Shown: positions 11,283 to 53,679 of the stretch, piece by piece
Numbering within the stretch: the first letter of the stretch is position 1
Layout of the letters: every line of letters starts with the position of its first letter
Assembly (NCBI RefSeq): GCF_006345805.1
Contig: NC_042997.1
Span: 36,704,001-36,768,000 of the forward strand
Length of the DNA: 64,000 nt
Direction: 5' to 3'
Source: Octopus sinensis
Taxonomy: Eukaryota
Translations under genes and position numbers: made by a program
The notes under the pieces: generated by a model
The model's input: the letters and a program-made list of their open reading frames with translations, nothing else
Databases searched by the model: none
Told to the model about the DNA's origin: nothing

Positions 11283-11289
11283 CACAGAA

Positions 11290-11320
<31 letters not shown>

Positions 11321-14897: not shown

Positions 14898-15000
14898 TTG
14901 GGGAAATTTCGAACATGGGTTCTGATTCCTAATGTATTTTTTCTTACTTGTTTCAGTCATTTTGACTGCGACATTATTATTATTATTATTATTATTATTA

Positions 15001-16104: not shown

Positions 16105-16275
<171 letters not shown>

Positions 16276-20926: not shown

Positions 20927-21114
20927 TGGTTAGCAGCTAATGGGAAACAGCTGATGAATTTCTGTTATTCCATTCCTGATAGTATTCAGTCTTACACACC
21001 ATTGATATTGCATCTCCTTGTGGTTAGCAGCTAATGGGAAACAGCTGATGAATTTCTGTTATTCCATTCCTGATAGTATTCAGTCTTACACACCATTGAT
21101 ATTGCATCTCCTTG
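20927..21114 (+). repeat. Two identical 94 bp tandem copies
   Basis: TGGTTAGCAGCTAATGGG...GCATCTCCTTG at 20927-21020 and 21021-21114. Confidence 0.95.
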
Positions 21115-27771: not shown

Positions 27772-28142
27772 AGAAATGAGTAATTATGTACATTATTTAC
27801 ATTATTTACATTTGACGGATATTTATCCTCATCTTGTTTGTTGTTAACACAACGTTTTGGCTAATATACCCTACAACCTTTATTAGGTGTCTTGGGGAAA
27901 TTTTGAACCTGAGTTCTCATTCCTAAGTTCTCATATTTTCCGATGTTGTTGTTGTTGTTATTATCATTATTATTATTATTATTATTCAGGTCAATGCCTG
28001 GAATTGAACTCGGAATCTTGGGGTTAGTAGCCCGCTCTTAGCCACTACGCCCACGGGCATATGGCGAAGTGGTTAAGAGGGCGGGCTACTAACCCCAAGA
28101 TGAGGAAAACATCCGTCAATTGTAAATAATGTAAATAATGTT
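27772..28142. mobile_element. Second copy of the palindromic tRNA-head/(AAT)n/hammerhead-tail element; right arm internally deleted
   Basis: Left arm on - has the tail with a decayed core (CTAATAA...AAAAC), (ATT)n and a head with GGCGTAGTGG and GAGTTCAATTCC boxes. The right head TGGCGAAGTGGTTAAG jumps at CAAGAT directly to the tail end. Confidence 0.8.
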
Positions 28143-28199: not shown

Positions 28200-28229
<30 letters not shown>

Positions 28230-28231
<2 letters not shown>

Positions 28232-28426
28232 TATATTAAATTAGAGATAAAACCACTATTAGGCAAATCATAGAATGAAAAACGTAAGCCAATACATAAG
28301 ATTAATTATTTATATTATTTTATATATATATCAAAATTATTAAAAAAACGATAATGGGTATAACACTACCATCGTTTCATGGCTGTCCAATTCGTAAAAA
28401 TTCGAGTTACAGTCAATCTTCAGGTG
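28230..28426 (-). mobile_element. Penelope-like terminal repeat fragment with hammerhead-like motif
   Basis: 28426-28364 on - reads CAC-CTGAAGA-T-TGACTGT...ACAGCCA-T-GAAAC-GATG-GTA-GTG. The segment 28230-28305 recurs inverted at ~60620-60690. Confidence 0.45.
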
Positions 28427-30753: not shown

Positions 30754-31065
30754 TTAAAGTAACATGTGTCTGCATTTTATTTTTCGCTCATCACAGATAT
30801 TCAGTAAATTATCATGCTTATAAAATAAAATTTCCTTAAACTCATTAGAACATAAATAACAAAAGTTCGCTCCTATACTATATGATTTAGTTTTACTAAT
30901 TATTTCCCAAGATAAATTATAATTAATATTTTGGGATTTAAGTCTCCAAATGTACTTGCTAAGTCCAGTGGAGTTAATTAAATTTTTATTTTTAAATGAA
31001 TTCATATGTTGTGCGATTCTTAATTTTATTTTCGAGGAAGTGGACCTTATATATATCGCGTTTGA

Positions 31066-31100
<35 letters not shown>

Positions 31101-31485
31101 TATTATTATTATTATCATGTAATGTAACTACACATTTATACACTACATCGTTAATATCACATTTATTATTTAATTTACATTTAGTTTTATCTCTACATGT
31201 ACAGTTAATTAGTGTCTTGTCTTTATCATTGCTGTTATTATGTAATTTATTTTCATAAAAATTATTCAGTTTAAATTTGTTAAAAGAAGAAATAATGTTA
31301 CTTACACTATTAATGGTGGAATAACCTACTCCGAAATTATTACTAGAGAAAATGTTTTTATATTTACGATTATCTCGAATAAATAGTTCAATAATATCTA
31401 AAATCTCTTTAATAATGTTCGTTTTAACTTGAGCACCATAAGGAACTATTATCCAAATTTTATTCTTATTTTCCTTCTTTTTGTT
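30754..31485 (-). pseudogene. Penelope-like element ORF C-terminus with GIY-YIG endonuclease
   Basis: KIWIIVPYGAQVKTNI...KYKNIFSSNNFGVGYS, one frameshift, then NCTCRDKTKCKLNNKC...VVYKCVV-(N)n-YIRSTSSKIKLRIAQHMNSF...NSTGLSKYIWRLK...W.I...FCYLC...LLN...KCRH. This is the characteristic PLE GIY-YIG pattern. Confidence 0.88.
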
Positions 31486-31499
31486 ATTAGAACTGGTGG

Positions 31500-31562
31500 T
31501 AATAGGAGAAGTAATAGTAGTAGTAGTGATGGTGGAGGTAATAGTAGTAGTAGTAGTAGCAA

Positions 31563-31597
<35 letters not shown>

Positions 31598-31620
31598 CCA
31601 CCGCCACCACCAGCAGTAGT
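31500..31620. repeat. (AGT)n microsatellite
   Basis: Direct inspection. Confidence 0.92.
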
Positions 31621-31977
31621 AGACAGATTTGTATATCAGTGAAATACTGAAATTTTGGAAGAACAAATAACTTTGAAGTACACTCTCAAGGAAAGAGTAT
31701 TCATAACCAGATTGAGTAAAAAAAAGACCAGATACGGTATTAAAAGCATTTAGCGAAATTGGGGAGCAGTATTTACAGCAGTGTAATAAACTCTCATTCA
31801 GGCGGATTGACGCCTGTCTATATGCCTTGTCTACTATTGCAAAGCAATGCATCAACGACATTAAAAAAGTGAGAAAAAAACAGAAACAACAAAGAAAGTG
31901 ACATCATCAGTTTGAAGACAGATGCTCATTGCGTACAACGAAACAATTCAATGCGTCTCACCAACAATGAAAAAACT
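31620..31977 (+). mobile_element. Probable N-terminal part of the R4/Dong-like LINE that continues at 49953
   Basis: Degenerate translation KERVFITRLSKK/PDTVLKAFSEIGEQYLQQCNKLSFRRIDACLYA...K*HHQFEDRCSLR resembles the pre-RT region (IN..LYA, W..RLE...LR) of this clade; recognition by eye only. Confidence 0.55.
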
Positions 31978-34900
31978 TTTTATGAAAATGTTTGATGAAT
32001 GTATTTGATGAAAATGTTTGATGAAAATGTTTGATGAAAAATGTTTGACGAAAATGTTTGATGAAACTGTTTGATGAAAATGTTTGATGATAAAAGTCTG
32101 ACGAAAATATTTAATTAAAATGTTTGATGAACAATGTTTGTTGAAATATGTTTAATGAAAATGTTTGATGAAATTGATTGATGAAGATGTTCGACGAAAA
32201 TGTTCGACGAAAATGTTCGACGAAAATGTTTGACGAAAATGTTTGATGAAAATTGTTGATGAAAATGTATAATGATAAATGTTTGATGAAAATGTTTGAC
32301 GAAAATGTTTGATGGAAATTGGTGACAATGTATGATAAAAGTATGATAAAAATGTTTGATGAAAATGTTTGATGAAAATGTTCGACGAAAATGTTCGAGG
32401 AAAATGTTCGTCGAAAATGTTTGACGAAAATGTTTTATGATAAATGTTTGATGAAAATGTTTGATGAAAATATGTGATAATAAATGTTTGATGAAAATGT
32501 TTGATGATAAATGTTTCATGAAAATATTTGATGAAAATATTTGAAGAAAAATGTTTAATGAAAATGTATAATGAAAATGTTTGATTAAATTTTTGATGAA
32601 AATGTTTAATGATAAATGTTTGCTGAAAAATGTTTGCTGAAAATGTTTGATGAAAATGTTGGATGAAAATGTTCGACGAAAATGTTTCACGAAAATGTTT
32701 GATGAAACTTGTTGATGAAAATGTATAATGATAAATGTTTGATGAAAATGTTTGATGAATATATTTGATGAAAAATATTTAATGAAAATGTTTCATGAAA
32801 ATATTTAATGAAAATATTTTGATGAAAAATGTTTGATGAAAATGTATGATGAAAATGTTTGATCAAATGTTTCATGAAAATGTTTGATGAAAATGTTTGA
32901 TGATAAATGTTTGATGAAAAATGTTTGATGAAAATGTTTGATAATAAATGTTTGATAAAAAATGATTGATGAAAATGTTTAATGAAAATATTTGATGAAA
33001 AATGTTTGATGAAAATGATTGATGAAAATGTTTGATTAAATTTTTGAAAATGTTCAATGATAAATGTTTGATGAAAATGTTTGATGAAAATGTTTGATGA
33101 AAATGTTCGACGAAAATGTTCGACGAAAATGTTCGACGAAAATGTTTGACGAAAATGTTCGACGAAAATGTTTGACGAAAATGTTTGAGGAAATTTGTTG
33201 ATGATAAATTTGTTGATGATAAATGTTTGATGAAAATGTTCGACGAAAATGTTCGTCGAAAATGTTTGATGAAAATTGTTGATGAAAATGTTTAATGATA
33301 AATGTTAGATGAAAAATGTTTCATGAAAATGTTTAATGATAAATGTTTGCTGAAAATGTTTGATGAAAATGTTTGATGAAAATGTTCCACGAAAATGTTC
33401 GACGAAAATGTTCGATGATAATGTTCGACGAAAATGTTCGACGAAAATGTTTGACGAAAATGTTTGGGGAAAATTGTTGATGACTATGTTGATGATAAAT
33501 GTTTGATGAAAATGTTCGACGAAAATGTTCGACGAAAATGTTGGTCGAAAATGTTTGACGAAAATTGCTGATGAAAATGTATAATGATAAATGTTTGATG
33601 AAAATGTTTAATAATAAATGTTGGATGAAAAATATTTGATGAAAAGGCTTGATGAAAATGTTTGATCACAAATGTTTCATGAAAATGTTTCATGAAAATG
33701 TTTAATGATAAATGTTTGATGAAAAATGTTTGTTGAAAATGTTTGTTGAAAATGTTTGATGAAAATGTTTGATGAAAATGTTCGACGAAAATGTTCGACG
33801 AAAATGTTCGGCGAAAATGTTTGACGAAAATGTTTGATGAAAATTGTTGATGAAAATGTATAATGATAAATGGTTGATGAAAATGTTTGATGAACATATT
33901 TGATGAAAAAATATTTCACGAAAATGTTTGATGAAAATGCTTGATGTAAATGTTTGATCACAAATGTTTCATCAAAATGTTTGATGAAAATATTTCATGA
34001 AAATGTTTGATGAAAATGTTTGATGATAAATGTTTGATAAAAAATATTATGAAAAATGTTTCATGAAAATGTTTCATGAAAATGTTTGATCATAAATGTT
34101 TCATGAAAATGTTTGCTGAAAATGTTCGACGAAAATGTTCTTTGAAAATGTTCGACGATAATGTTCGACGAAAATGTTCGATGAAAATGTTCGACGATAA
34201 TGTTCGACGAAAATGTTTAATGAACATTATTGATGAAAAAGTTGATGATAAATGTTTGATCAAAATCGTTGATGAAAATGTATAATGATAAATGTTGGAT
34301 GAAAAATGTTTGATGAAAATGCTTGATGTGTTTAATCACAAATGTTTCATCAAAATGTTTGATGAAAATATTTCATGATAAATGTTTGATGAAAAATCTT
34401 TGATAAAAATGTTTCATGAAAATATTTGATGAAAATATGGATGAAAAATGTTTGATGATGAAAAATGTTTGATTAAATTTTTGATGAAAATATTAAATGT
34501 TTGCTGAAAATGATTGCTGAAAATGTTTGATGAAAATGTTCGACGAAAATGTTCGACGAAAATGTTCGACAAAAATGTTCGACGAAAATGTTTGACGAAA
34601 ATGTTTGATGAAAATTGTTGATGAAAATGTATAATGATAAATGTTTCATGAAAATGTTTGATGATAAATGTTTGATAAAAAATGAAAGATGAAAATGTTT
34701 AATGAAAATATTTGATGAAAATATTTGATGAAAAATGTTTGATGAAAATGTTTGAGGATAAATGTTTGATAAAACATATTTGATGAAAATGTTTGACGAA
34801 AAAGTTTCATGAAAATGTTTGATTAAATTTTTGATGAAAATGTTTAATAAATGTTTGCTGAAAATGTTTGATGAAAATGTTTGATAAAAATGTTCGACGA

Positions 34901-37900
34901 AAATTTTCGACGAAAATGTTTGACGAATATTGTTGATGAAAATGTATAATGATAAATGTTTGATGAATATGTTTAATGATAAATATTGATGAAATAAGTT
35001 TGATGAAAATGCTTGATGTAAATGTTTGATTACAAATGTTTCATAAAAATGTTTGATGAAAATATGTTATGATAAATGTCTGATGAAAAATGTTTGATGA
35101 AAAATGTTTGATGATGAAAAATGTTTCTTGAAAATGTTTGATTAAATTATTGATGAAAATGTTTAATGATAAATGTTTGCTGAAAATGTTGATGAAAATG
35201 ATCTACGAAAATGTTCATTTAATGATAAATGTTTGATGAAAATGTTTGATAAATGTTGGATGAAAAATGATTGATGAAAATGCTTGATGAAAATGTTTGA
35301 TGAAAATGTTTAATGAACATTATTGATGAAAAAGTTGATGATAAATGTTTAATGAAAAATGTTTGATGAAAATGTTTCATGAAAATATTTGATGAAAATA
35401 TTTGATGAAAATATTTGATGAAAATGATTGATTAAATTTTTGATGAAAATGTTTAATGATAATTGTTTGCTAAAAAATGATTGCAGAAAATGTTTGATGA
35501 AAATGTCTGATGAAAATTTTCGACGAAAATGTTCGGCGATAATGTTCGAGAAAATGTTCGACGAAATTGTTGTTGAAAATGTATAATGATAAATGCTTGA
35601 TGAAAATGTTTATTGATAAATGTTGGATGAAAAAATATTTGCTGAAAATGCTTGATGAAAATGTTTGATCACAAATGTTTCATGAAAATATTTGATGAAA
35701 ATATTTGATGATAAATGGTTGATGAAAAATGTTTGATGAAAATGTTTCATGAAAATATTTGATGAAAATGTTTGATGAAAATTGTTGATGAAAATGTATA
35801 ATGATAAATGTTTGATGAAAATATTTCATGATAAATGTTTGATGAAAAATCTTTGATAAAAATGTTTCATGAAAATATTTGATGAAAATATTGGATGAAA
35901 AATGTTTGATGAAAATGTTTGATTAATTTTTGATGAAAATATTAAATGTTTGCTGAAAATGATTGCTGAAAATGTTTGATGAAAATGTTCGACGAAAATG
36001 TTCGACGAAAATGTTCGACAAAAATGTTCGACGAAAATGTTTGACGAAAATGTTTGATGAAAATTGTTGATGAAAATGTATAATGATAAATGTTTCATGA
36101 AAATGTTTGATGATAATGTTTGATAAAAAATGAAAGATGAAAATGTTTAATGAAAATATTTGATGAAAATATTTGATGAAAAATGTTTGATGAAAATGTT
36201 TGAGGATAAATGTTTGATAAAACATATTTGATGAAAATGTTTGACGAAAAAGTTTCATGAAAATGTTTGATTAAATTTTTGATGAAAATGTTTAATAAAT
36301 GTTTGCTGAAAATGTTTGATGAAAATGTTTGATAAAAATGTTCGACGAAAATTTTCGACGAAAATGTTTGACGAATATTGTTGATGAAAATGTATAATGA
36401 TAAATGTTTGATGAATATGTTTAATGATAAATATTGGATGAAATAAGTTTGATGAAAATGCTTGATGTAAATGTTTGATTACAAATGTTTCATAAAAATG
36501 TTTGATGAAAATATGTTATGATAAATGTCTGATGAAAAATGTTTGATGAAAAATATTTGATGAAAATGTTTCTTGAAAATGTTTGATTAAATTATTGATG
36601 AAAATGTTTAATGATAAATGTTTGCTGAAAATGTTTGATGAAAATGATCTACGAAAATGTTCATTTAATGATAAATGTTTGATGAAAATGTTTGATAAAT
36701 GTTGGATGAAAAATGATTGATGAAAATGCTTGATGAAAATGTTTGATCACAAAAGTTTCATGAATATGTTTAATGAAAATATTTGATGATAAATGTTTAA
36801 TGAAAAATGTTTGTTGAAAATGTTTCATAAAAATATTTGATGAAAATATTTGATGAAAAATATTTGATGAAAATGATTGATTAAATTTTTGATGAAAATG
36901 TTTAATGATAATTGTTTGCTAAAAAATGATTGCAGAAAATGTTTGATGAAAATGTCTGATGAAAATTTTCGACGAAAATGTTCGGCGATAATGTTCGAGG
37001 AAAATGTTCGACGAAAATTGTTGTTGAAAATGTATAATGATAAATGCTTGATGAAAATGTTTATTGATAAATGTTGGATGAAAAATATTTGCTGAAAATG
37101 CTTGATGAAAATGTTTGATCACAAATGTTTCATGAAAATATTTGATGAAAATATTTGATGATAAATGGTTGATGAAAAATGTTTGATGAAAATGTTTCAT
37201 GAAAATATTTGATGAAAATGTTTGATGAAAATTGTTGATGAAAATGTATAATGATAAATGTTTGATGAAAATGTTTGATGAATATATTTGATGAAAAATG
37301 TTTGATGAAAATGTTTGATGAAAATATTTGATGAAAATGTTTGATGAAAATGTTCGACGAAATTGTTCGACGAAAATGTTCGGCGAAAATGTTTGATGGA
37401 AATGTTCGACGAAAATGTTTGACGTAAATTGTTGATGAAAATGTATAATGATAAATGTTTGATGAACATGTTTGATGAAAAATGTTGATGAAAAATGTTT
37501 GATGAAAATGTTTGATTAAATGTTTGATGAAAATGTTTCATGAAAATATTTGGTGAAAATATTTAGATGAAAATTGTTGAGATGAAAATGTTTGATGAAA
37601 AATGTTGATGATAAATGTTTGATGAAAATGTTTCATGAAAATTGTTGATGAAAATGTATTATGATAAATCTATGATGAAAATGTTAATGATAAATGTTGG
37701 ATGAAAAATATTTGCTGAAAATGCTTGATGAAAATGTTTGATCACAAATGTTTCATGAATATGTTTGATGAAAATATTTGATGAAAATATTTGATGAAAA
37801 ATGTTGAGACGAAAATGTTTGATGAAAAATGTTGATGATAAATGTTTGATGAAAATGTTTGATGATAAATGTTTGATGAAAATGTTTCATGAAAATATTT

Positions 37901-40900
37901 GATGATGAAAATGTTTGATGCAAATGTTTAATGATAAATGTTGGATAAAAAATATTGATGAAAATGTTTGATGAAAATGTTTGATCATAAATGTTTAATG
38001 AAAATGTTTGATGATAAATGCTTGATGAAAAATGTTTCATGAAAATGTTTCATGAATCAAATATGATGAAAAATATTTTATGAAAATGTTTGATGAAAAT
38101 GTTTCATGAAAAAGTTTCCTTAAATTTTTGATGAAAATGTTTACTGATGTTGCTGAAAAATGTTTAATGAATATGTGTGATGATAAATTTTTGATGAAAA
38201 TGTTTCATGAAAATATATGATGAAAATGTTTGATGCAAATGTTTAATGATAAATGTTGGATAAAATATGTTTGATGGAATGTTTGATCATAAATGTTTCA
38301 TGAAAATATTTGTAGAAAATGTTTGATGATAAATGTTTGATGAACATGTTTGATGAAAAATGTTTGATGAAAATGTTTGATGAAAATGTTTGATCATAAA
38401 TGTTTCATGAAAATGTTTGAGGATAAATGTTTGATGAAAATATTTGATGAAAATATTTGATGAAAAATGTTTGATGAAAATGTTTGATGAAAATGTTCGA
38501 CGAAAATGTTCGACGAAAATGCTCAACGAAAATATTCGACGAAAATGTTTGAAGAAAATGTTTGACGAAAATGTTTGACGAAAATGTTTGATGAAAATCG
38601 TCGATGAAAATGTATAATGATAAATGTTTGATGAAAATGGTTGATGAAAATGTTTGAGTAAATTTTTGATGAAAATATTTAATGATAAATGTTGCATGAA
38701 AAATATTTGATGAAAATGTTTGATTAAATGTTTGATGAAAATGTTTCATGAAAATATTTGGTGAAAATATTTAGATGAAAATTGTTGAGATGAAAATGTT
38801 TGATGAAAATGTTTGATGATAAATGTTTGATGAAAATGTTTCATGAAAATTGTTGATGAAAATGTATTATGATAAATCTATGATGAAAATGTTTAATGAT
38901 AAATGTTGGATGAAAAATATTTGCTGAAAATGCTTGATGAAAATGTTTGATCACAAATGTTTCATGAATATGTTTGATGAAAATATTTGATGAAAATATT
39001 TTGATGAAAAATGTTGAGACGAAAATGTTTGATGAAAATGTTTGATGATAAATGTTTGATGGAAATGTTTGATGATAAATGTTTGATGAAAATGTTTCAT
39101 GAAAATATTTGATGAAAATGTTTGATGCAAATGTTTAATGATAAATGTTGGATAAAAAATATTTGATGAAAATGTTTGATGAAAATGTTTGATCATAAAT
39201 GTTTAATGAAAATGTTTGATGATAAATGCTTGATGAAAAATGTTTCATGAAAATGTTTCATGAATCAAATATGATGAAAAATATTTTATGAAAATGTTTG
39301 ATGAAAATGTTTCATGAAAAAGTTTCCTTAAATTTTTGATGAAAATGTTTACTGATGTTTGCTGAAAAATGTTTAATGAATATGTGTGATGATAAATTTT
39401 TGATGAAAATGTTTCATGAAAATATATGATGAAAATGTTTGATGCAAATGTTTAATGATAAATGTTGGATAAAATATGTTTGATGGAAATGTTTGATCAT
39501 AAATGTTTCATGAAAATATTTGTAGAAAATGTTTGATGATAAATGTTTGATGAACATGTTTGATGAAAAATGTTTGATGAAAATGTTTGATGAAAATGTT
39601 TGATCATAAATGTTTCATGAAAATGTTTGAGGATAAATGTTTGATGAAAATATTTGATGAAAATATTTGATGAAAAATGTTTGATGAAAATGTTTGATGA
39701 AAATGTTCGACGAAAATGTTCGACGAAAATGCTCAACGAAAATATTCGACGAAAATGTTTGAAGAAAATGTTTGACGAAAATGTTTGACGAAAATGTTTG
39801 ATGAAAATCGTCGATGAAAATGTATAATGATAAATGTTTGATGAAAATGTTTGATGAAAATGTTTGAGTAAATTTTTGATGAAAATATTTAATGATAAAT
39901 GTTTGCGGAAAATGTTTGTTGAAAATGTTCGTTCAAATTGTTTGTGATGAAAATGATGGATGAAAATGTTTGATGAAAATGTTCGACGAAAATGTTCGAC
40001 GAAAATCTTCAACGAAAATGTTCGACGAAAATGTTTGTCGAAAATGTTTGACGAAAATGTTTGACGAAAATGTTTGATGAAAATTGTTAATGAAAATGTA
40101 TAATGATAAATGTTTGATGAATACATTTGATGAAAAATGTTTGATGAAAATGTTTGATGAAAATGTTTGATGATAAATGTTTGATGAAAAATGTTTCATG
40201 AAAATGTTTAATGAAAATATTTGATGAAAATATTTGATGAAAATGTTTGATGAAAATGTTTGATGAATATGTTTGATTAAATTTTTGATGAAAATGTTTA
40301 ATGACGTTTGCTGAAAAATGATAGATGAAAATGTTTGATGAAAATATTTGATGAAAATGTTTCATGAAAATGTTCGACGAAATTGTTCGACGAAAATGTT
40401 CGACGAAAATGTTTGACGAAAATTGTTGATGAAAATGTATAATGATAAATGTTTGATGACATGTTTAATGATAAATGTTCCATGAAAAATATTTGATGAA
40501 AATGTTTGATTAAATGTTTGATAAAAATGTTTCATGAAAATATTTGATGAAAATATTTAGATTAAAAATGTTGAGATGAAAATGTTTAATGAAAATGTTT
40601 GATGATAAATGTTTGATGAAAATGTTTCATGAAAATTGTTGATGAAAATGTATAATGATAAATGTTTGATGAAAATGTTTAATGATAAAAGTTGGATGAA
40701 AAATATTTGCTGAAAATGCTTGATGAAAATGTTTGATCACAAATGTTTCATGAATATGTTTGATGAAAATATTTGATGAAAATATTTTGATGAAAAATGT
40801 TGAGACGAAAATGTTTGATGAAAATGTTTGATAAATGTTTGATGAAAATGTTTCATGAAAATATTTGATGAAAATGTTTGATGCAAATGTTTAATGATAA

Positions 40901-43900
40901 ATGTTGGATAAAAAATATTTGATGAAATGTTTGATGAAAATGTTTGATCATAAATTTTAATGAAAATGTTTGATGATAAATGCTTGATGAAAAATGTTTC
41001 ATGAAAATGTTTCATGAATCAAATATGATGAAAAATATTTTATGAAAATGTTTGATGAAAATGTTTCATGAAAAAGTTTCCTTAAATTTTTGATGAAAAT
41101 GTTTACTGATGTTTGCTGAAAAATGTTTAATGAATATGTGTGATGATAAATGTTTGATGAAAATGTTTCATGAAAATATATGATGAAAATGTTTGATGCA
41201 AATGTTTAATGATAAATGTTGGATAAAAAATGTTTGATGAAAATGTTTGATCATAAATGTTTCATGAAAATATTTGTAGAAAATGTTTGATGATAAATGT
41301 TTGATGAACATGTTTGATGAAAAATGTTTGATGAAAATGTTTGATGAAAATGTTTGATCATAAATGTTTCATGAAAATGTTTGAGGATAAATGTTTGATG
41401 AAAATATTTGATGAAAATATTGGATGAAAAATGTTTGATGAAAATGTTTGATGAAAATGTTCGACGAAAATGTTTGACGAAAATATTTGATGAAAAATTG
41501 TTAATGAAAATGTTTCATGAAAATGTTTAATGAAAATATTTGATGAAAATATTTGATGAAAATGTTTGATGAAAATGTTTGATGATAAATGTTTGATTAA
41601 ATTTTTGATGAAAATGTTTAATGATGTTTGCTGAAAAATGATAGATGAAAATGTTTGATGAAAATGTTCGACGAAAATGTTTGACGAAAATATTTGATGA
41701 AAAATTGTTAATGAAAATGTTTCATGAAAATGTTTAATGAAAATATTTGATGAAAATATTTGATGAAAATGTTTGATGAAAATGTTTGATGATAAATGTT
41801 TGATTAAATTTTTGATGAAAATGTTTAATGATGTTTGCTGAAAAATGATAGATGAAAATGTTTGATGAAAATATTTGATGAAAATGTTTGATGAAAATGT
41901 TCGACGAATTTGTTCGACGAAAATGTTCGGCGGAAATGTTTGATGAAAATGTTCGACGAAAATGTTTGACGAAAATTGTTGATGAAAATGTATAATGATA
42001 AATGTTTGATGACATGTTTAATGATAAATGTTGCATGAAAAATATTTGCTGAAAATGTTTGATTAAATGTTTGATAAAAATGTTTCATGAAAATATTTGA
42101 TGAAAATATTTAGATAAAATGTTGAGATGAAAATGTTTAATGAAAATGTTTGATGATAAATGTTGATGAAAATGTTTCATGAAAATTGTTGATGAAAATG
42201 TATAATGATAAATGTTTGATGAAAATGTTTAATGATAAAAGTTGGATGAAAAATATTTGCTGAAAATGCTTGATGAAAATGTTTGATCACAAATGTTTCA
42301 TGAATATGTTTGATGAAAATGTTTGATGAAAATATTTTGATGAAAAATGTTGAGATGAAAATGTTTGATGAAAATGTTTGATGATAAATGTTTGATGAAA
42401 ATTTTTGATGATAAATGTTTCATGAAAATGTTTCATGAAAATATTTGATGAAAATGTTTGATGCAAATGTTTAATGATAAATGTTGCATAAAAAATATTT
42501 AATGAAAATTGTTTGATGAAAATGATGGATGAAAATGTTTGATGAAAATGTTCGACGAAAATGTTCGACGAAAATGTTCAACGAAAATGTTCGACAAAAA
42601 TGTTTGTCGAAAATGTTTGACGAAAATGTTTGACGAAAATGTTTCATGAAAATTGTTAATGAAAATGTATAATGATAAATGTTTGATGAAAATGTTTGAT
42701 GAAAATGTTTGATCATAAATGTTTCATGAAAATGTTTGATGATAAATGTTTGATGAAACATGTTTCATGAAAATGTTTGATGAAAAATGTTTCATGAAAA
42801 TGTTTCATGAAAATATTTGGTGAAAATATTTGATGAAAATGTTTGATGAAAATGTTTGATTAAATTTTTGATGAAAATGTTTAATGATGCTTGCTGAAAA
42901 ATGTTTGATGAAAATGTTTGATGAAAATGTTTGATGAAAATGTTTGATGAAAAGGTTTGATGAAAATTTTTGATGGAAATGTTTGATGAAAATGTTTGAT
43001 TAAATTTTTGATGAAAATGTTTAATGATGTTTGCTGAAAAATGTTTGATGAAAATGTTTGATGAAAAGGTTTGATGAAAATTTTTGATGAAAATGTTTGA
43101 TGATAAATGTTTGATGAAAATGCTTGATGAAAATGTTTGATCACAAATGTTTCATGAAAATGTTTGATGAAAATATTTGATGATAAATGGTTGATGAAAA
43201 ATGTTTGATGAAAATGTTTCATGAAAATATTTGATGAAAATGTTTGACGAAAATTGTTGATGAAAATGTATAATGATAAATGTTTGATGGAAATGTTTGA
43301 TGAATATATTTGATGAAAAATGTTTGATGAAAATGTTTGATGAAAATATTTGATGAAAATGTTTGATGAAAATGTTCGACGAAATTGTTCCACGAAAATG
43401 TTCGACGAAAATGTTTGATGAAAATGTTCGACGAAAATGTCTGACGAAAATTGTTGATGAAAATGTATTATGATAAATGACATGTTTAATGATAAATGTT
43501 GCATGAAAAATATTTGATGAAAATGTTTGATTAAATGTTTGATGAAAATGTTTCATGAAAATATTTGATGAAAATATTTTGATGAAAAATGTTGAGATGA
43601 AAATGTTTGATGAAAATGTTTGATGATAAATGTTTGATGAAAATGTTTCATGAAAATATTTGATGACAATGTTTGATGCAAATGTTTAATGATAAATGTT
43701 GGATAAAAAATATTTTATGAAAATTTTTGATGAAAACGTTTCATGAAAAAGTTTCCTTAAATTTTTGATGAAAATGTTTACTGATGTTTGCTGAAAAATG
43801 TTTAATGAAAATGTTTGATGATAAATGTTTGATGAAAATGTTTCATGAAAATATATGATGAAAATGTTTGATGCAAATGTTTAATGATAAATGTTGGATA

Positions 43901-46900
43901 AAAAATGTTTGATGAAAATGTTTGATCATAAATGTTTCATGAAAATATTTGTGGAAAATGTTTGATGATAAATGTTTGATGAAAATGTTTGATGAAAAAT
44001 GTTTGATGAAAATGTTTGATGAAAATGTTTAATCATAAATATTTCATGAAAATGTTTGAGGATAAATGTTTGATGAAAGATGTTTCATGAAAATGTTTGA
44101 TGAAAATGTTTGATGAAAATGTTTGATGAAAATGTTTGATGAAAATGTTTGATCATAAATGTTTCATGAAAATGTTTGATGATAAATGCTTGATGAAAAT
44201 GTTTGATGAAAATGTTTCATGAAAATATTTGATGAAAATATTTGATGAAAACGTTTCATGAAAAAGTTTCCTTAAATTTTTGATGAAAATGTTTACTGAT
44301 GTTTGCTGAAAAATGTTTAATGAAAATGTTTGATGATAAATGTTTGATGAAAATGTTTCATGAAAATATATGATGAAAATGTTTGATGCAAATGTTTAAT
44401 GATAAATGTTGGATAAAAAATGTTTGATGAAAATGTTTGATCATAAATGTTTCATGAAAATATTTGTGGAAAATGTTTGATGATAAATGTTTGATGAAAA
44501 TGTTTGATGAAAAATGTTTGATGAAAATGTTTGATGAAAATGTTTAATCATAAATATTTCATGAAAATGTTTGAGGATAAATGTTTGATGAAAGATGTTT
44601 CATGAAAATGTTTGATGAAAATGTTTGATGAAAAATGTTTGATGAAAATGTTTGATGAAAATGTTTGATCATAAATGTTTCATGAAAATGTTTGATGATA
44701 AATGCTTGATGAAAAATGTTTGATGAAAATGTTTCATGAAAATATTTGATGAAAATATTTAATGAAAATGTTTGATGAAAATGTTTGATTAAATTTTTGA
44801 TGAAAATGTTTAATGATGTTTGCTGAAAAATGTTTGATGAAAATGTTTGATGAAAATGTTTGATGAAAATGTTTGATGAAAAGGTTTGATGAAAATTTTT
44901 GATGAAAATGTTTGATGAAAATGTTTGATTAAATTTTTGATGAAAATGTTTCATGATATTTGCTGAAAAATGTTTGATGAAAATGTTTGATGAAAAGGTT
45001 TGATGAAAATTTTTGATGAAAATGTTCGACGAAAATGTTCAACGAAAATGTTCGACGAAAATGTTTGTCGAAAATGTTTGACGAAAATGTTTGACGAAAA
45101 TGTTTGATGAAAATTGTTAATGAAAATGTATAATGATAAATGTTTGATGAATACATTTGATGAAAAACGTTTCATGAAAATGTTTCATGAAAATGTTTGA
45201 TGAAAAATATTTGATGAACATGTTTCATGAAAATATTTGATGAAAATATTTGAAAATGTTTGAAAATGTTTGATGAAAATGTTTGATTAAATTTTTGATG
45301 AAAATGTTTAATGATGTTTGCTGAAAAATAATAGATGAAAATGTTTAATGAAAATGTTTGACGAATACATTTGATGAAAAATGTTTGATGAAAATGTTTG
45401 ATGAAAATATTTCATCATAAATGTTTCATGAAAATGTTTGATGAAAATGTTTGATGAAAATGTTTCATGAAAATATTTGATGAAAATGTTTGATGAAAAT
45501 GTTTGATGAAAATGTTTGATGAAAATGTTTGATGAAAAGGTTTCATGGAAATTTTTGATGAAAATGTTCGACGAAAATGTTCGACGAAAATGTTCAACGA
45601 AAATGTTCGACGAAAATGTTTGACGAAAATGTTTGATGAAAATTGTTGATGAAAATGTATAATGATAAATGTTTGGTTAAATTTTTGATGAAAATGTTTA
45701 ATGTTTGCTGAAAAATGTTTGATGAAAATGTTTGATGAAAATGTTTGATGAAAAGGTTTTTTTGATGAAAATGCTTGATGAAAATGTTTGATTAAATTTT
45801 TGATGAAAATGTTTAATGATGTTTGCTGAAAAATGTTTGATGAAAATGTTTGATGAAAATGTTTGATGAAAATGTTTGATGAAAATTTTTGATGAAAATG
45901 TTCGACGAAAATGTTCAACGAAAATGTTCGACGAAAATGTTTGTCGAAAATGTTTGACGAAAATGTTTGACGAAAATGTTTGATGAAAATTGTTAATGAA
46001 AATGTATAATGATAAATGTTTGATGAATACATTTGATGAAAAACGTTTCATGAAAATGTTTGATGATAAATGTTTGATGAAAAATATTTGATGAAAATGT
46101 TTCATGAAAATATTTGATGAAAATATTTGAAAATGTTTGAAAATGTTTGATGAAAATATTTGATTAAATTTTTGATGAAAATGTTTAATGATGTTTGCTG
46201 AAAAATAATAGATGAAAATGTTTGATGAAAATGTTTGACGAATACATTTGATGAAAAATGTTTGATGAAAATGTTTGATGAAAATGTTTCATCATAAATG
46301 TTTCATGAAAATGTTTGATGATAAATGTTTGATGAAAAATGTTTGATGAAAATGTTTCATGAAAATATTTGATGAAAATATTTGATGAAAATGTTTGATG
46401 AAAATGTTTGATGAAAATGTTTGATGGAAATTTTTGATGAAAATGTTCGACGAAAATGTTCGACGAAAATGTTCGACGAAAATGTTCAACGAAAATGTTC
46501 GACGAAAATGTTTGACGAAAATGTTTGATGAAAATTGTTGATGAAAATGTATAATGATAAATGTTTGATTAAATTTTTGATGAAAATGTTTAATGTTTGC
46601 TGAAAAATGTTTGATGAAAATGTTTGATGAAAATGTTTGATGAAAAGGATTGATGGAAATTTTTGATGAAAATGTTCGACGAAAATGATCGACGAAAATG
46701 TTCAACGAAAATGTTCGACGAAAATGTTTGACGAAAATGTTTGATGAAAATTGTTGATGAAAATGTATAATGATAAATGTTTGAAAATGTATTATGAAAA
46801 TGTTTGATGAATATATTTGATGAAAATATGTATAATGAAAATGTTTGATCATAAATGTTTGATGGAAATGTTTGATGAAAATGTTTTATTAAATTTTTGA

Positions 46901-49900
46901 TGAAAATATTTAATGATAAATGTTTGCGGAAAATGTTTGCTGAAAATGTTTGATGAAATTGTTTGATGAAAATCTTTGATGAAAATGTTTGATGAAAATC
47001 TTGATGAAAATGTTTGCTCATAAATGTTTGATGAAAAATGGTTGATGAATATCTTTGATGAAGATGTTTGATGATAAATGTTTGATGAAAATGTTGATGA
47101 AAATGTTTGATTAAATTTACTTGATGAAAATGTTGAATTAAATTGTTTCATGAAAATGTTTGATGAAAATGTTTGATGAAAATGTTTGATTAAATTTTTG
47201 ATGAAAATGTTTAATGATGTTTGCTGAAAAATGTTTGATGAAAATGTTTGATGAAAAGGTTTGACGAAAATGTTTGACGAAAATGTTCAACGAAAATGTT
47301 CGACGAAAATGTTTGTCAAAAATGTTTGACGAAAATGTTTGACGAAAATGTTTGATGAAAATTGTTAATGAAAATGTATAATGATAAATGTTTGATGAAT
47401 ACATTTGATGAAAAACGTTTGATGAAAATGTTTGATGAAAATGTTTGATCATAAATATTTCATGAAAATGCTTGTTGATAAATGTTTGATGAAAAATATT
47501 TGATGAAAATGTTTCATGAAAATATTTGATGAAAATATTTGAAAATGTTTGAAAATGTTTGATGAAAATGTTTGATTAAATTTTTGATGAAAATGTTTAA
47601 TGATGTTTGCTGAAAAATAATAGATGAAAATGTTTGATGGAAATTTTTGATGAAAATGTTCGACGAAAATGTTCGACAAAAATGTTCGACGAAAATGTTC
47701 AACGAAAATGTTCGACGAAAATGTTTGACGAAAATGTTTGATGAAAATTGTTGATGAAAATGTATAATGCTAAATGTTTGAAAATGTTTGATGAAAAGTT
47801 TGATGAAAATATGTATAATGAAAATGTTTGATCATAAATGTTTGATGGAAATGTTTGATGAATATGTTTGATTAAATTTTTGATGAAAATATTTAATGAT
47901 AAATGTTTGCGGAAAATGTTTGCTGAAAATGTTTGATGAAATTGTTTGATGAAAATCTTTGATGAAAATGTTTGATGAAAATCTTTGATGAAAATGTTTG
48001 CTCATAAATGTTTGATGAAAAATGGTTGATGAATATCTTTGATGAAGATGTTTGATGATAAATGTTTGATTAAATGTTTGATGAAAATGTTTGATTAAAT
48101 TTACTTGATGAAAATGTTTGAATTAAATTGTTTCATGAAAATGTTTGATGAAAATGTTTGATGAAAATGTTTGATTAAATTTTTGATGAAAATGTTTAAT
48201 GATGTTTGCTGAAAAATGTTTGATGAAAATGTTTGATGAAAAGGTTTGACGAAAATGTTGACGAAAATGTTCAACGAAAATGTTCGACGAAAATGTTTGT
48301 CAAAAATGTTTGACGAAAATGTTTGACGAAAATGTTTGATGAAAATTGTTAATGAAAATGTATAATGATAAATGTTTGATGAATACATTTGATGAAAAAC
48401 GTTTGATGAAAATGTTTGATGAAAATGTTTGATCATAAATATTTCATGAAAATGCTTGTTGATAAATGTTTGATGAAAATATTTGATGAAAATGTTTCAT
48501 GAAAATATTTGATGAAAATATTTGAAAATGTTTGAAAATGTTTGATGAAAATGTTTGATTAAATTTTTGATGAAAATGTTTAATGATGTTTGCTGAAAAA
48601 TAATAGATGAAAATGTTTGATGGAAATTTTTGATGAAAATGTTCGACGAAAATGTTCGACAAAAATGTTCGACGAAAATGTTCAACGAAAATGTTCGACG
48701 AAAATGTTTGACGAAAATGTTTGATGAAAATTGTTGATGAAAATGTATAATGCTAAATGTTTGAAAATGTATTATGAAAATGTTTGATGAAAATATGTAT
48801 AATGAAAATGTTTGATCATAAATGTTTGATGGAAATGTTTGATGAATATGTTTGATTAAATTTTTGATGAAAATATTTAATGATAAATGTTTGCGGAAAA
48901 TGTTTGCTGAGAATGTTTGATGAAATTGTTTGATGAAAATGTTGGATGAAAATGTTTGATGAAAATCTTTCATGAAAATGTTTGCTCATAAATGTTTGAT
49001 GAAAAATGGTTGATGAAAATCTTTGATGAAAATGTTTGATGATAAATGTTTGATTAAATGTTTGATGTAAATGTTTGATGATAAATGTTTGATGAAAAAT
49101 GTTTGATTAAATTACTTGATGAAAATGTTTGATGAAAATTGTTTGATGAAAATGTTTGATGAAAATGTTTGATGAAAATGTTTGATTAAATTTTTGATGA
49201 AAATGTTTAATGATGTTTGCTGAAAAATGTTTGATGAAGATGTTTGATGAAAATGTTTGATCATAAATGTTTCATGAAAATATTTGTAGAAAATGTTTGA
49301 TGATAAATGTTTGATGAAAATCTTTGATGAAAATTGTTTGATGAAAATGTTTGATGAAAATGTTTGATCATAAATGTTTCATGAAAATGTTTGAGGATAA
49401 ATTTTTGATAAAAAATGTTTCTTGAAAATGTTTGATGAAAATGTTTCATGAAAATATTGATGAAAATATTTGATGAAAAATGTTGATGAAAATGTATAAT
49501 GATAAATGTTTGAAAATGTATTATGAAAATGTTTGATGAATATATGATGAAAATATGTATAATTAAAATGTTTGATCATAAATGTTTGATGGAAATGTTT
49601 GATGAAAATGTTTGATTAAATTTTTGATGAAAATATTTATTGATAAATGTTCGCGGAAAATGTTTGCTGAAAATGTTTGATGAAATTGTTTGATGAAAAT
49701 GTTTCATGAAAATGTTTGATGAAAATCTTTGATGAAAATGTTTGCTCATTAATGTTTGATGAAAAATGGTTGATGAAAATCTTTGATGAAAATGTTTGGT
49801 GATAAATGTTTGATTAAATGTTTGATGAAAATGTTTGATGATTAATGTTTGATGAAAAATGTTTGATTAAATTTCTTGATGAAAATGTTTGATGAAAATT

Positions 49901-49952
49901 GTTTGATGAAAATGTTTGATGAAAATTTTGATGATAAACGTTTGATGAAAAT
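31978..49952 (+). repeat. ~18 kb satellite of 13-bp monomer (GATGAAAATGTTT)n with higher-order repeats
   Basis: Continuous monomers with variants GACGAAAATGTTC, GATGATAAATGTTT, CATGAAAATATTT and GATTAAATTTTT; repeated variant blocks at about 1450, 1210, 985 and 515 bp periods. Confidence 0.98.
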
Positions 49953-52300
49953 TGAGGCAGTAAATAGACGAGGCTTATTTGTAAATTGATAGCTCTCAAG
50001 CAGGACTAAATGACGTCAGTGGGAAACTCCCTCTTCAGATGCGAATAATCGAGAAAAACAAGTTACCGGAACCAAAATAAAATTAACCGAAGCCAAACAT
50101 ATGTATTCATAGACAGGGGAGGAGAAGCATTAAACATCACAGAAGCACTTTCACAAGACGACATACACTCCTTCTTGAGGAAAATCTGGAGCGAAGAGAA
50201 TGAATTTAATCAAAATGCTCTGTGGCTAGAAGAAATTGGAATAAGTTATAGGCTCTTCTTTACATGCAAGACATAAAAAAATTGACGCTGATACCTTTGT
50301 AACTGTGATCCATAAACTTCAGAATGAAAAAACACTTGGAAGAGACTTCATTGTCGGTTACTGGTACAAAAGTGTAACCTTCTACTGTTCATAACTTATT
50401 AATCGGTACCAGCAAGTTCTCAATGAGAATAGTAGGATACCACACATGCTAGCTCTGGCAGAGACAAAACTGACCCCCAAATGCAGAACCACCCACATGG
50501 CCAAAAACTACTGGCCAATTGCGTGCCGGAAATTAATGTTTAAAATATATACTGCGTGTAAATTTCTTCCTCCAAGACAATTCTGAAAGTTATATAATCA
50601 CAACAGAACAAGCGGCCGGGAAGGAGAGTGTCTGGAGATGTGCCGAGCATCTGTCAATTAGCAAAACTATAATGTCAGAGGTGCGGCAGCATAGGACGAA
50701 TTTCATTTCAACGTGTCTTGACTGCAACAAAAGTCTTTGAGTCTATCCCCCACTTACAGATGCTAGAAGCCCTTCTACTTGATAAAATGCCGATGAGCAT
50801 AGTCAAAGCCATAGCTGACATCGTGGTCCACCATCTTGAAGTAAAATACAAGGTGGTACTCTATTAAAAGTGATAGGATACAAGGAGGTACTGTATTATA
50901 AGTGATAGAATACAATATTCTACGGGCACAGCCCCTCTGTGATGTTACGTATACTTTCTGTTAACCCCTTGCCATTCGTGTTAAGAAAGTCACAAGAATA
51001 TCTCACTGGTTCATAAGGGAAGAGAAATACCAAAATTACGCACTGTTTCTTTGCAGAACGGATATTCATGAGATGAAAAAGAGCATTGACCTGGTTACAA
51101 GATTCTCAAAGGATGTAGAACTGGAGTTGGTCAGGATAAAGGTTGCTATATGGTTGTAAAAAGAGGGAAAAGTATAAACCATACTAGCAACATCTCCATC
51201 AATGTTTTAACTGTTTCCCCTATATCTGATGTGGAATGCTACAGGTATCTAGGAGTGGATGAAAACATATCTTACAACGGTGCCTGTAACAAAACACGTG
51301 TCACTAAAGATTATTACAATCAAATAAGGAAAATTTGGTCCTCGGATCGCTCTGCATTGAATAAAAGAATTGGGGTGCTTGAGTGGACGTTTGATGAGAT
51401 CCGAATTAAAGATGAAAAAACGCTGATATAATTTTTACATCAACACTGACGTAGACCACCAATGCCAAAAATGAAAACAAGGCTGCAGAGGCTTAACATC
51501 AACGCAGACTGGCTTTGAATGTCATATTATAACCATTCGGCAAGATCATTTAACCACCAAGTATCGAAGTGCATCCCTTGACCAAGTTTGCATACATGAG
51601 GCTGATAACGCTACGAAACTTGGAAAGCAACAACATGAGCAGCATTCCTTCTCTAATAATCTTCAATACATTCACAAAGAAGTCGCTCGACTCTACCACA
51701 ATGTATCATCAGATAAAAAGATGAGCAAATATGAGCAGAAGATCACGCATGGATATGTTATTATAAAGCTCCGTGATAATGGTAACATTGATCATCGAAG
51801 CAGTCTATCGCGGACCAAAAACCGAATTACAGTCACTTAGAATGTTATGTATTTGCAATCTAGGAACAGGAAATATCATCCAAATATCTGATAGACAAAA
51901 GAGACGGGGATGCAGGAAAAGCTGTAAAATATGATAACCTATGCAGACTTAGTGGAGTTAACATCAAAGATTGGTTCCACATCGTCAGGATTGGTCCGTA
52001 AATTTCATCACTGTATGATCTACCTATGACATATGATGTTGTAGCTAGGACACTGTATAATGAGATCCGTCGGAAGGATAACCGCGAGAACAAAGAAATA
52101 AGAACCCACAATATGGTGGAAGCTATAGTCAATCAAAACAAAAAGGAGTACTAGAGGAATGTCCCAGTGTAAACCTCAATAAAATGTAAACACATTACAT
52201 TTGATATAATTATTTGGGACAAAAAAGAGAAACAGCGTACTGCTGTTCAAATCAGATACCCACCAGAGGTTAACAGACAGCTAAAGTTTAGCAAAAAAGG
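49953..52300 (+). mobile_element. Degenerate R4/Dong/NeSL-type non-LTR retrotransposon (RT + C-terminal region)
   Basis: Translated remnants in correct order with many stops and frameshifts: DDIHSFLRKIWSEENEFNQNALWLEEI, KNYWPIAC, FESIPH, YRYLGVDE, KIWSSDRSALNK, GVLEWTFDEI, GCRGL, EQEISSKYL, NLCRL...FHIV, DVVARTLY, DIIIWDK. Confidence 0.85.
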
Positions 52301-53526
52301 GTACACTTTTTCTAGGTATGCAACTATACTCTTGGCAGTATACGCATAAAATAAAACATACAAATCTGCACGTATACATACGTACATACATGCATACATG
52401 CAGAATTGCCCTGTTGATGTTGAAATTCCAATGGAGTCTTGGATCTACGTTACAAACCGACTCTCTCTCTCTCTATTGGCAAGAAATCTTGAAATAAAAC
52501 CGAATGACATGCATACATACACACACAAACACACATGTATACCTACTACGTATGTACATACATACGTACGTACTTACATGCATACATGCATTCATCCATC
52601 CATCCGTCCATCCTTCTATCCATCCATTCATACATACATACATACATATGAGGTGAATGACAAAATTATCTAGTTGCGAATGAATTACATAGATTAGTCA
52701 GCCAGGAATATATTCCTCGAATGTTTACATTGTGAAGCCGGTGTTTGCCGCCTACTTTGCTACGAAGATATAAGTGAAAGTCTAAAATTGCCGTGATATA
52801 TCCTGCCGCATGCGTGCACAGCGCGTGTGATAAAGAAGTCTCCTCCCACAAATACACATATGCAGAGAAAAATCTATTTATACGCGTGTGTAGATGTGTG
52901 AAAGAGTTTGTTGTGTATACATGTAGTTTATATATGCTGATTTACTGACCTATTATTCTGAAGTTTATCCGATATGCATATGCAGAGAAGAACATGCGTG
53001 GAGAGTAATTTTCCTCAGATTAGTTGCCTAGTTATATTTTGGAAAGAGTGGGTTTTCAAAAGACTACTTGTGTATTCATTCTACTATTTCTGTATGCATA
53101 CATTTATTCACGGTTCAATGCTTTATATACCAACCTATCTATTTAAGATTAGAGCGTGTCGAAAGAACTCAGAAGTAAATGACAGGTGGATTAGTTACAG
53201 AAATCTATTACACATTTGTTTTATATTCTGTGAATGTGCATGAAGTTTTGATAAAATACTGCCAGTTACATCAAGGATAGTATTCAATAATACTTCCAAA
53301 AAAAAAAAAACAATCAATAGAAACACTGACTGACTAAATTATATTCTGGTTCGATCTGATTGACAAAGAACTAAAATATATGCCCCAGCTCGGTTGTATG
53401 GCAATGACTGTAATCAATGAAAGAAAAATAAACCTAATTTAGTATATTCATTAATGCATACAAATGTATATAGATGACGCACACATACACAAATACACAC
53501 ATACAAACACGCACACATACGCACAT

Positions 53527-53679
53527 TACTGGTACAAGAGTGTAACATTCTACTGTTCATAACTTATCAATCCGTACCAGCAAGTTCCCAATGAGAATAG
53601 TAGCATACCACACAGGCTAGCCCTGGCAGAGACAAAACTGATCCCCAAATGCAGAACTACCCACATGGCGAAAAACTAC
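53527..53679 (+). repeat. ~150 bp duplicate of LINE segment 50358-50511
   Basis: TACTGGTACAA...AAAAACTAC aligns with 50358-50511 with scattered substitutions. Confidence 0.9.

What the first reader, a model, noticed from the sequence alone, without database searches (positions are those of the whole stretch)
31620..52300. An 18-kb satellite appears to have been born inside a LINE open reading frame
Seen: the 13-bp satellite is bounded on both sides by plus-strand LINE-like coding remnants with no intervening sequence. The left flank ends ...AAAACTTTTTATGAAAATGTTTGATG and the right resumes GTTTGATGAAAATTGAGGCAGTAAAT, in a frame that continues (with a few stops) into DDIHSFLRKIWSEENEFN and the RT. 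The left flank translates to what looks like the preceding N-terminal region of the same clade. Inference: a short TTKATGAAAAT motif in the element seeded the array, so the uninterrupted ancestor should read approximately ...TTTTTATGAAAATGTTTGATGAAAATTGAGG.... This would be a direct snapshot of satellite origin from a retrotransposon.
Basis: partly seen in the sequence, partly recalled or inferred. Interest (0 to 1): 0.75.

Follow-up and report, generated by a model that had tools for sequence, protein, structure and literature searches.

The report
Tandem array grown inside dead retrotransposon
An 18-kb run of a 13-base repeat in an octopus-like genome sits inside the reading frame of a long-dead retrotransposon copy and was most likely copied from 13 bases of that element's own coding sequence; this is a clean example of a known way in which tandem repeats arise.

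Summary
Window 31978-49952 is one uninterrupted, single-orientation array of about 1369 copies of TTTGATGAAAATG. Both ends abut plus-strand remains of the same decayed non-LTR retrotransposon copy.

In a related copy in Octopus sinensis (L001), the homologues of the two flanks are contiguous, in the same order and strand, and there is no array. That stretch of L001 aligns without large gaps to the N-terminal ORF region of intact ~1100-aa relatives, the nearest named being from Argonauta hians.

The array lies about 85 codons upstream of the RT. Left flank plus one unit plus right flank restores the family's conserved K-(W/M)-F-G-(N/S)-(T/S)-K motif. The monomer ATGAAAATGTTTG is therefore most likely the element's own codons.

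About half the array consists of kb-scale internal duplicates at 95-98% identity, while neighbouring monomers are only about 80% alike. Recent growth was therefore by unequal exchange of large blocks.

The element is R2-like: no APE domain, and its closest solved structures are R2 proteins.

Two things could not be tested: whether the 13-mer occurs elsewhere in the genome, and what the orthologous locus looks like.

Repeats derived from transposable elements, including from LINE ORF2, are documented. This is a new member of a known kind, of modest interest.

The parts
31499..31597 (+). (GTA)33 microsatellite at the 5' edge of the recognisable LINE remnant. It reads as a Ser run in the LINE frame.
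   Evidence: TRF. L001 has GTAGTAGTAGTGGTAG at the equivalent place. Argonauta P0160 has 'RSSSSMS' just upstream of the aligned N-terminal region. Assigning it to the element is my inference.
31620..31977 (+). Left part of the decayed LINE copy: the N-terminal (pre-RT) ORF region, with stops and frameshifts and a ~44-bp deletion relative to L001 near 31911.
   Evidence: 74% identity to L001 8893-9142, E 6e-39. It is colinear with P0008/P0160 aa ~135-300 through L001.
31978..49952 (+). Tandem array of 13 bp x ~1369, consensus TTTGATGAAAATG (phase ATGAAAATGTTTG). The first unit, 31978-31990, is TTTTATGAAAATG. The minus strand is open: (HFHQTFSSNIFIK)n.
   Evidence: TRF; identity profile and sharp edges; 260 exact consensus units; minus-strand ORFs up to 209 aa.
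34353..37350 (+). Example of a recent kb-scale internal tandem duplication within the array: 34353-35901 matches 35806-37350 at 97.4% identity, offset 1453 bp.
   Evidence: Self-BLAST. Other pairs: 37452-38693 with 38659-39903 at 98.2%, and 46795-48197 with 47779-49183 at 97.4%. About 46% of the array lies in duplicates of at least 300 bp at 95% identity or more, and 82% at 90% or more.
49953..50280 (+). Right part of the LINE: the rest of the pre-RT linker, from GSK-TRLICKLIALKQD to DDIHSFLRKIWSEENEFN.
   Evidence: blastn to L001 from 9273; tblastn with P0008 aa 321-407; alignments.
50281..51430 (+). Decayed reverse-transcriptase domain. It contains a 32-bp x2.2 tandem duplication at 50845-50915.
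   Evidence: blastx/tblastn to RVT_1-bearing relatives; P0001 (O. sinensis LOC115227337, RVT_1); TRF.
51431..52523 (+). Decayed C-terminal region of the ORF (remnant of a Cys/His motif and of a KPDI...D...K-like stretch) and the 3' end. It runs into (ACAT)n at 52507-52648.
   Evidence: blastx to P0162 aa 795-1094. DNA homology to L001 continues to 52523 / L001 11482. The motif reading comes from my inspection.

Best explanation
A copy of an old R2-like non-LTR retrotransposon (no APE domain) inserted here and decayed. Thirteen bases of its own N-terminal coding sequence, ATGAAAATGTTTG (codons M-K-M-F plus the first base of the following Gly codon), lie about 85 codons upstream of the RT. These bases were duplicated in tandem, presumably by replication slippage at short T-rich or ATGAA microhomology.

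Once a few copies existed, the array grew in place to about 18 kb, mainly by unequal exchange that duplicated blocks of 0.5-1.5 kb. The inferred pre-expansion junction is ...CTT TTT ATG AAA ATG TTT GGC AGT AAA....

Shown: the array; the identity and colinearity of the flanks; the absence of the array in two related copies; and the block duplications. Inferred: the exact seed, the slippage step, and that the array has no function.
For: Array and edges.

The flanks are one element. They are contiguous and array-free in L001. That L001 stretch is a continuous ORF region in intact relatives.

The intact Argonauta hians copy (L003 6178-9519) has no tandem repeat at the equivalent site.

Length test against L001: k = 1-2 units fits best, 24 and 23 against 10 for k = 0.

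Left flank plus one unit plus right flank restores the conserved K-W/M-F-G-N/S-T/S-K...L..KL..LKQ(E/D) block. By my reading of the sequences, L001 has ATAGAAATG(ATA)CTTG at the site, matching the monomer at 10 of 13 positions with a 3-nt gap, similar to the ~74% identity of the flanks. The best 20-mer there is in the top 0.5% of L001 positions for similarity to the monomer.

Growth mode: blocks of 1.2-1.5 kb at 97-98% identity against ~80% between neighbouring monomers. The leftmost 2.4 kb is not part of any high-identity duplicate.

Precedent: arrays that expand from short repeats inside retrotransposons (PMC7004042), and LINE ORF2-derived tandem repeats listed in PMC9659126.
Against: There is only one same-family comparator (L001, 71-76% identical). 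The Argonauta copy is too distant for DNA-level comparison.

The similarity of the L001 site to the monomer is modest. Ten other sites in the 21.7-kb locus match a 26-mer of the consensus better. After allowing for about 40 positions at the site, the 20-mer enrichment is not significant.

The gain from k = 0 to k = 1 comes largely from avoiding a gap. A foreign insertion that also deleted ~15-20 bp would score the same.

The last unit (ATGAAAATTGAG) differs from the predicted ATGAAAATGTTTG.

Genome-wide occurrence of the 13-mer and the orthologous locus could not be examined.
Confidence: 0.78

Rival explanations
1. A pre-existing 13-bp satellite from elsewhere in the genome was inserted into the dead LINE copy, by ectopic recombination, gene conversion or reintegration of extrachromosomal circles. 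On this view the resemblance of the monomer to the local LINE sequence is coincidence or microhomology used for the insertion.
For: The monomer's match to the L001 site is statistically weak. Near-identical 13-mers occur in tandem in unrelated contigs: a Tara Oceans contig L002 with ~21 copies and non-LINE flanks, and L005 with 2.2 copies. The motif is therefore not unique to this LINE.
Against: About one unit-length of element sequence at the site is accounted for by the array edges. The edge units complete a conserved protein motif of the family. There is no target-site duplication or foreign junction sequence. L002 and L005 come from unknown, probably unrelated organisms, and their flanks share nothing with the window.
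Confidence: 0.1
2. The tandem repeat is a family-level internal feature: the master element already carried a short variable array at this position, as in Ogre LTR elements. This locus would then be one expanded member, so many copies should carry short arrays.
For: This is the commonest documented route for retrotransposon-derived satellites (PMC7004042). Only one same-family copy could be inspected.
Against: L001 has no tandem repeat at the site. None of the intact relatives' ORFs shows a 13-nt or 13-aa periodic insertion there, nor does the Argonauta DNA. A 13-nt repeat shifts the frame and could not persist in an active ORF.
Confidence: 0.05
3. The array is real but its assembled length and internal structure are partly an assembly artefact, with mis-joined or collapsed and re-expanded reads over a low-complexity repeat.
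For: Near-identical kb blocks in an 18-kb simple array are hard to assemble. No read data are available here.
Against: The blocks differ by 2-5% and sit in a consistent nested pattern with unique variant monomers. Both junctions are clean.
Confidence: 0.07

Closest known systems
Retrotransposon-derived satellites that arise by expansion of short tandem repeats inside the element (Ogre LTR elements in Lathyrus sativus; Vondrak et al. 2020, PMC7004042)
   Same: A long array is embedded in, and flanked on both sides by, one retrotransposon copy. Other copies carry little or no repeat. The expansion is locus-specific.
   Different: There the seed is a pre-existing short array in a non-coding part of an LTR element and is shared by the family. 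Here the seed appears to be single-copy coding sequence of a non-LTR element, and the monomer is only 13 bp.
Tandem repeats derived from LINE ORF2 (microsatellite at a common site in L1 ORF2, Pvc20; PROsat from L1 ORF2 in Phodopus; chicken HinfI/CR1), as tabulated in Zattera & Bruschi 2022, PMC9659126
   Same: The repeat derives from LINE coding sequence.
   Different: Those derive from APE-type L1 or CR1 elements in vertebrates. Most have monomers that are either true microsatellites or large fragments of the element. This one is from an R2-like element in a cephalopod and forms an 18-kb array of a 13-mer at a single locus.
Satellite birth from tandem TE insertions (McGurk & Barbash 2018, PMC5932611)
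   Same: Transposable-element sequence turns into a tandem array that then grows by unequal exchange.
   Different: That model needs a double insertion, so the whole TE becomes the monomer. Here a 13-nt internal segment is the monomer and the rest of the element stays single-copy on either side.
R2-superfamily non-LTR retrotransposons (those carrying a restriction-like endonuclease)
   Same: Relatives of the host element are single ORFs of ~1100 aa with only RVT_1 in Pfam and no APE domain. Their best solved-structure matches are R2 proteins.
   Different: The clade (R2, R4, Hero, NeSL or CRE) was not determined. The C-terminal nuclease was read by eye only. No site specificity was shown.

Membership tests
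TE-derived tandem array formed in situ | The array is flanked on both sides by the same TE copy, in the same orientation and colinear with uninterrupted copies. | tested here: met
   Colinear with L001. Continuous ORF region in intact relatives.
TE-derived tandem array formed in situ | Related copies of the TE lack the array at the homologous site. | tested here: met
   L001 has none. Argonauta L003 has none. Only two comparators were available.
TE-derived tandem array formed in situ | The monomer is homologous to TE sequence at the site. | tested here: inconclusive
   For: the k = 1-2 length fit, restoration of the motif, and a 10/13 match to L001 read by eye from the sequences. Against: not significant on its own.
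Satellite DNA in the strict sense (an abundant family, often at several loci or in heterochromatin) | High genomic abundance, or arrays at several loci. | not testable with these tools
   No Octopus genome can be searched by DNA here. The protein-database proxy and the metagenome scans found nothing relevant.
Minisatellite (monomer of about 10-60 bp) | Monomer length and head-to-tail organisation. | tested here: met
   13-bp period, 1369 copies, one orientation. The array length of 18 kb is in the satellite range.
R2-superfamily (RLE-type) non-LTR retrotransposon | RT domain of non-LTR type. | tested here: met
   RVT_1 in P0001 and the relatives. The window copy aligns to them. R2 proteins are the best PDB matches.
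R2-superfamily (RLE-type) non-LTR retrotransposon | No N-terminal APE endonuclease. | tested here: met
   Pfam finds only RVT_1 (and a weak zf-RVT) in full-length relatives. In one search, close relatives list only PF00078, while distant hits carry PF03372.
R2-superfamily (RLE-type) non-LTR retrotransposon | C-terminal CCHC motif plus a PD-(D/E)XK restriction-like endonuclease. | tested here: inconclusive
   Motifs such as CRHCx8HIVGSC and KPDM...E...D...K were read by eye in P0009 and others. The PDB match reaches aa 926 of 1085 but does not cover the nuclease. No profile test was run.
R2-superfamily (RLE-type) non-LTR retrotransposon | Sequence-specific insertion. | not tested
   Both Octopus copies end in ACAT-rich repeats at the 3' side and lie near the same minus-strand ORF. 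Two copies are too few to judge.

The most novel reading that the evidence does not exclude
This locus, or this LINE family, is the birthplace of a genome-wide Octopus satellite. Arrays of TTTGATGAAAATG elsewhere, perhaps pericentromeric, would then descend from the 13 coding bases of this R2-like element, and the window would preserve the founding array with both element junctions intact.
Probability: 0.08. Interest if true: 0.6.

Novelty: new member of a known kind. Interest (0 to 1): 0.3.

Why it matters
The locus preserves both junctions between a long tandem array and the single-copy element sequence it grew from. The monomer can therefore be traced to specific codons, and the two phases of growth can be read directly: a first small duplication, then kb-block unequal exchange. 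No paper on cephalopod satellite DNA turned up in one literature search, so this could be a useful worked example and a marker locus for comparing Octopus assemblies. It does not change the general picture, because the origin of tandem repeats from transposable elements is well documented.

Tried and rejected
Pfam on single-frame translations of either flank gave nothing; the copy is too decayed.

The first protein search, with a stitched RT translation, returned only one Octopus protein. The exhaustive search and a search with the intact Argonauta protein gave many relatives, but none closer than 30-45% aa identity. No closer DNA comparator than L001 could be fetched.

tblastn of intact relatives against the left flank alone found nothing. 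The link had to go through L001.

I tried to find the satellite elsewhere through its open minus-strand frame, (HFHQTFSSNIFIK)n. This gave only weak hits in short marine-metagenome contigs.

Exact-pattern scans of metagenome contigs found nothing for a 39-mer and one irrelevant 2.2-copy hit for a 29-mer.

An exact look-up of a window ORF (51150-51431), meant to find the source contig or other assemblies, returned nothing on record.

I considered that both Octopus copies were 5'-truncated just after an APE domain. I rejected this because the family has no APE domain.

I considered that the minus-strand ORF upstream belongs to the LINE. This is not supported: there is no such ORF next to the Argonauta or L004 copies.

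A literature search for Octopus satellite DNA found no specific paper.
Full report
**Observation**

TRF reports a single array at 31978-49952 with period 13, 1368.9 copies, 80% matches and consensus TTTGATGAAAATG. Only 260 monomers are exact copies of the consensus. Identity to the consensus is even along the array, 86-92% per 500 bp. It falls to background within one or two monomers at each end. There is no foreign insert and no inverted segment.

**The right flank**

From 49953 to about 52523 the plus strand carries the remains of a non-LTR retrotransposon ORF: pre-RT linker, RT and C-terminal region. It aligns to many RVT_1-bearing proteins. It is much more decayed than 'a few stops' suggests. 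There are at least five frame changes and 16 in-frame stops within the aligned segments, and a 32-bp tandem duplication inside the RT.

**The left flank and colinearity**

On its own the left flank hits nothing in Pfam or in intact proteins. The only close protein in the 5.8-billion-sequence database was Octopus sinensis LOC115227337. Its genomic locus, L001 (CM016860.1), holds a second decayed copy of the same family.

In L001, window 31672-31922 matches 8893-9142 (74% identity, E 6e-39) and window 49962-52523 matches 9273-11482 (71-76% identity). Strand and order are the same, and no tandem repeat lies between them.

The conceptual translation across that stretch of L001 aligns end to end with the N-terminal region of intact relatives. 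These are P0008 aa 214-395 (E 6e-27) and P0009 aa 110-291 (E 1e-18), both against a small database. A multiple alignment places both window flanks in the same columns.

The two flanks are therefore adjacent parts of one ORF. The array sits inside it, about 85 codons upstream of the conserved FW..IW motif that precedes the RT.

**What kind of element**

Full-length relatives are single ORFs of about 1100 aa. The nearest named ones are hypothetical proteins of the octopod Argonauta hians. Pfam finds only RVT_1 in them, plus a weak zf-RVT, and no APE endonuclease. More distant hits do carry PF03372. Their best matches among solved structures are R2 retrotransposon proteins.

By eye they have a C-terminal Cys/His motif and a KPD...D/E...K stretch, as in elements that carry a restriction-like endonuclease. 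I did not test that domain formally, and the clade within the R2 group is undetermined.

**Is the monomer the element's own sequence?**

I aligned the joined flanks plus k consensus units to L001 9177-9330. The scores were 10, 24, 23, 16 and 5 for k = 0 to 4. L001 therefore holds about one, at most two, unit-lengths at the site.

With one unit kept, the window reads ...K-K-L-F-M-K-M-F | G-S-K-x-T-R-L-I-C-K-L-I-A-L-K-Q-D. This lines up with the family's conserved ...K-(W/Q)-F-G-(N/D)-(T/S)-K-x-K-T-L-..-(K/R)-L-..-L-K-Q-(E/D)-L block. The left junction keeps K-M-F and the right junction keeps G-S-K.

My inferred ancestor is ...CTT TTT ATG AAA ATG TTT GGC AGT AAA..., and the monomer ATGAAAATGTTTG is the 13 bases before the Gly codon. 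By my own reading of the sequences, L001 has ATAGAAATG(ATA)CTTG there: 10 of 13 matches with a one-codon gap, similar to the identity of the flanks.

This support is suggestive, not decisive. The L001 site is in the top 0.5% of positions for similarity of a 20-mer to the monomer. That is not significant once the ~40 candidate positions are counted, and other places in L001 match a 26-mer better. The Argonauta copy (L003, intact ORF 6178-9519) has no tandem repeat at the equivalent place. It is too distant for DNA comparison.

**How the array grew**

Neighbouring monomers are about 80% alike, yet the array contains blocks of 1.2-1.5 kb repeated in tandem at 97-98% identity:

- 34353-35901 with 35806-37350
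- 37452-38693 with 38659-39903
- 46795-48197 with 47779-49183

About 46% of the array lies in internal duplicates of at least 95% identity, and 82% in duplicates of at least 90%. The leftmost 2.4 kb is in none of the high-identity ones.

This pattern is expected if a small slippage-type duplication was followed by unequal exchange of multi-monomer blocks. A 13-nt repeat shifts the reading frame, so the expansion either began in an already dead copy or killed it.

**What could not be tested**

No Octopus genome is searchable by DNA with these tools. I tried to reach other arrays through the open minus-strand frame of the satellite, (HFHQTFSSNIFIK)n. This found only short marine-metagenome contigs. 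One of them (L002, Tara Oceans) carries about 21 copies of a near-identical 13-mer with unrelated flanks. Exact scans of metagenome contigs gave nothing useful.

Genome-wide abundance, other flanks, and the orthologous locus therefore remain open. For the same reason, 'satellite' in the strict sense is not established.

**Comparison with what is known**

Arrays that expand from sequence inside retrotransposons are well documented (PMC7004042, PMC5932611). A recent review lists several tandem repeats derived from LINE ORF2 (PMC9659126). This case differs in host (a cephalopod), in element type (R2-like), and in that the seed seems to be single-copy coding sequence with both junctions preserved.

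It is a new member of a known kind. Its predicted ancestor is close to mine and cannot be distinguished from it with the present data. Its interest score was too high.

Noticed in passing
window 30754-31640 (minus strand): A minus-strand frame is open for about 295 codons right up to the LINE's left edge, in AT-rich DNA. It ends ...CYLCSNEFKEILFYKHDNLLNICDERKIKCRHMLL* and reads the (GTA)n tract as a Thr run. Pfam gives no significant hit (weak CpXC only). From memory it resembles small GIY-YIG-type ORFs of invertebrates; that was not tested. A decayed homologue lies at the same relative position and orientation in L001 (7707-7934, 35% aa identity, E 3e-5). None lies next to the Argonauta or L004 copies. 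The shared arrangement is unexplained.
   Followed up: partly
window 31499-31597: (GTA)33 sits where intact relatives have a Ser-rich stretch ('RSSSSMS' in Argonauta P0160), and L001 has a short GTA run at the same place. It may be a second, smaller in-ORF repeat expansion in the same dead element.
   Followed up: partly
window 53526-53679: A 154-bp copy of part of the RT (50358-50511) at 93% identity lies 1 kb beyond the element's 3' end, next to a CA/ACAT microsatellite. This is a local duplication made after the element had decayed.
   Followed up: partly
window 50845-50915: A 32-bp x2.2 tandem duplication (87% matches) inside the RT of the same LINE copy: another small slippage event in the element.
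   Followed up: no
window 15170-15930 (minus strand): A 5'-truncated 3' end of a younger LINE of the same general architecture. It has an intact 197-aa C-terminal ORF (CRFCNDMIETVDHIISGC ... KPDIVVKD ... IDMSIPCDHN) and is bordered by long (AAT)n/(AAG)n runs at 16116-16275.
   Followed up: no
window 20927-21116: A perfect 94-bp x2.0 tandem duplication (100% identity), apparently very recent.
   Followed up: no
window 14789-15000 and 27783-27986: The same pair of features occurs twice, 13 kb apart: (ATTATTTAC)x3 followed about 170 bp later by an (ATT)n run. These are probably two copies of one dispersed repeat.
   Followed up: no
window 28200-28348; L001 12608-12756: A 150-bp dispersed repeat is shared at 86% identity, in opposite orientation, between the window and the O. 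sinensis locus. It is probably a SINE-like element.
   Followed up: no
L002 (ENA ERZ908221, Tara Oceans contig) 563-858: About 21 copies of CATTTTCATCAA[A/G], a 13-mer almost identical to the window's monomer. The flanks are non-LINE and the contig ends are themselves direct repeats. The organism is unknown, so this is either convergence or a related repeat.
   Followed up: partly
L004 (ENA ERZ25072740) 2266-5250 and 6001-8683: Two relatives of the LINE lie head to tail on one 12-kb contig of an unidentified organism.
   Followed up: no
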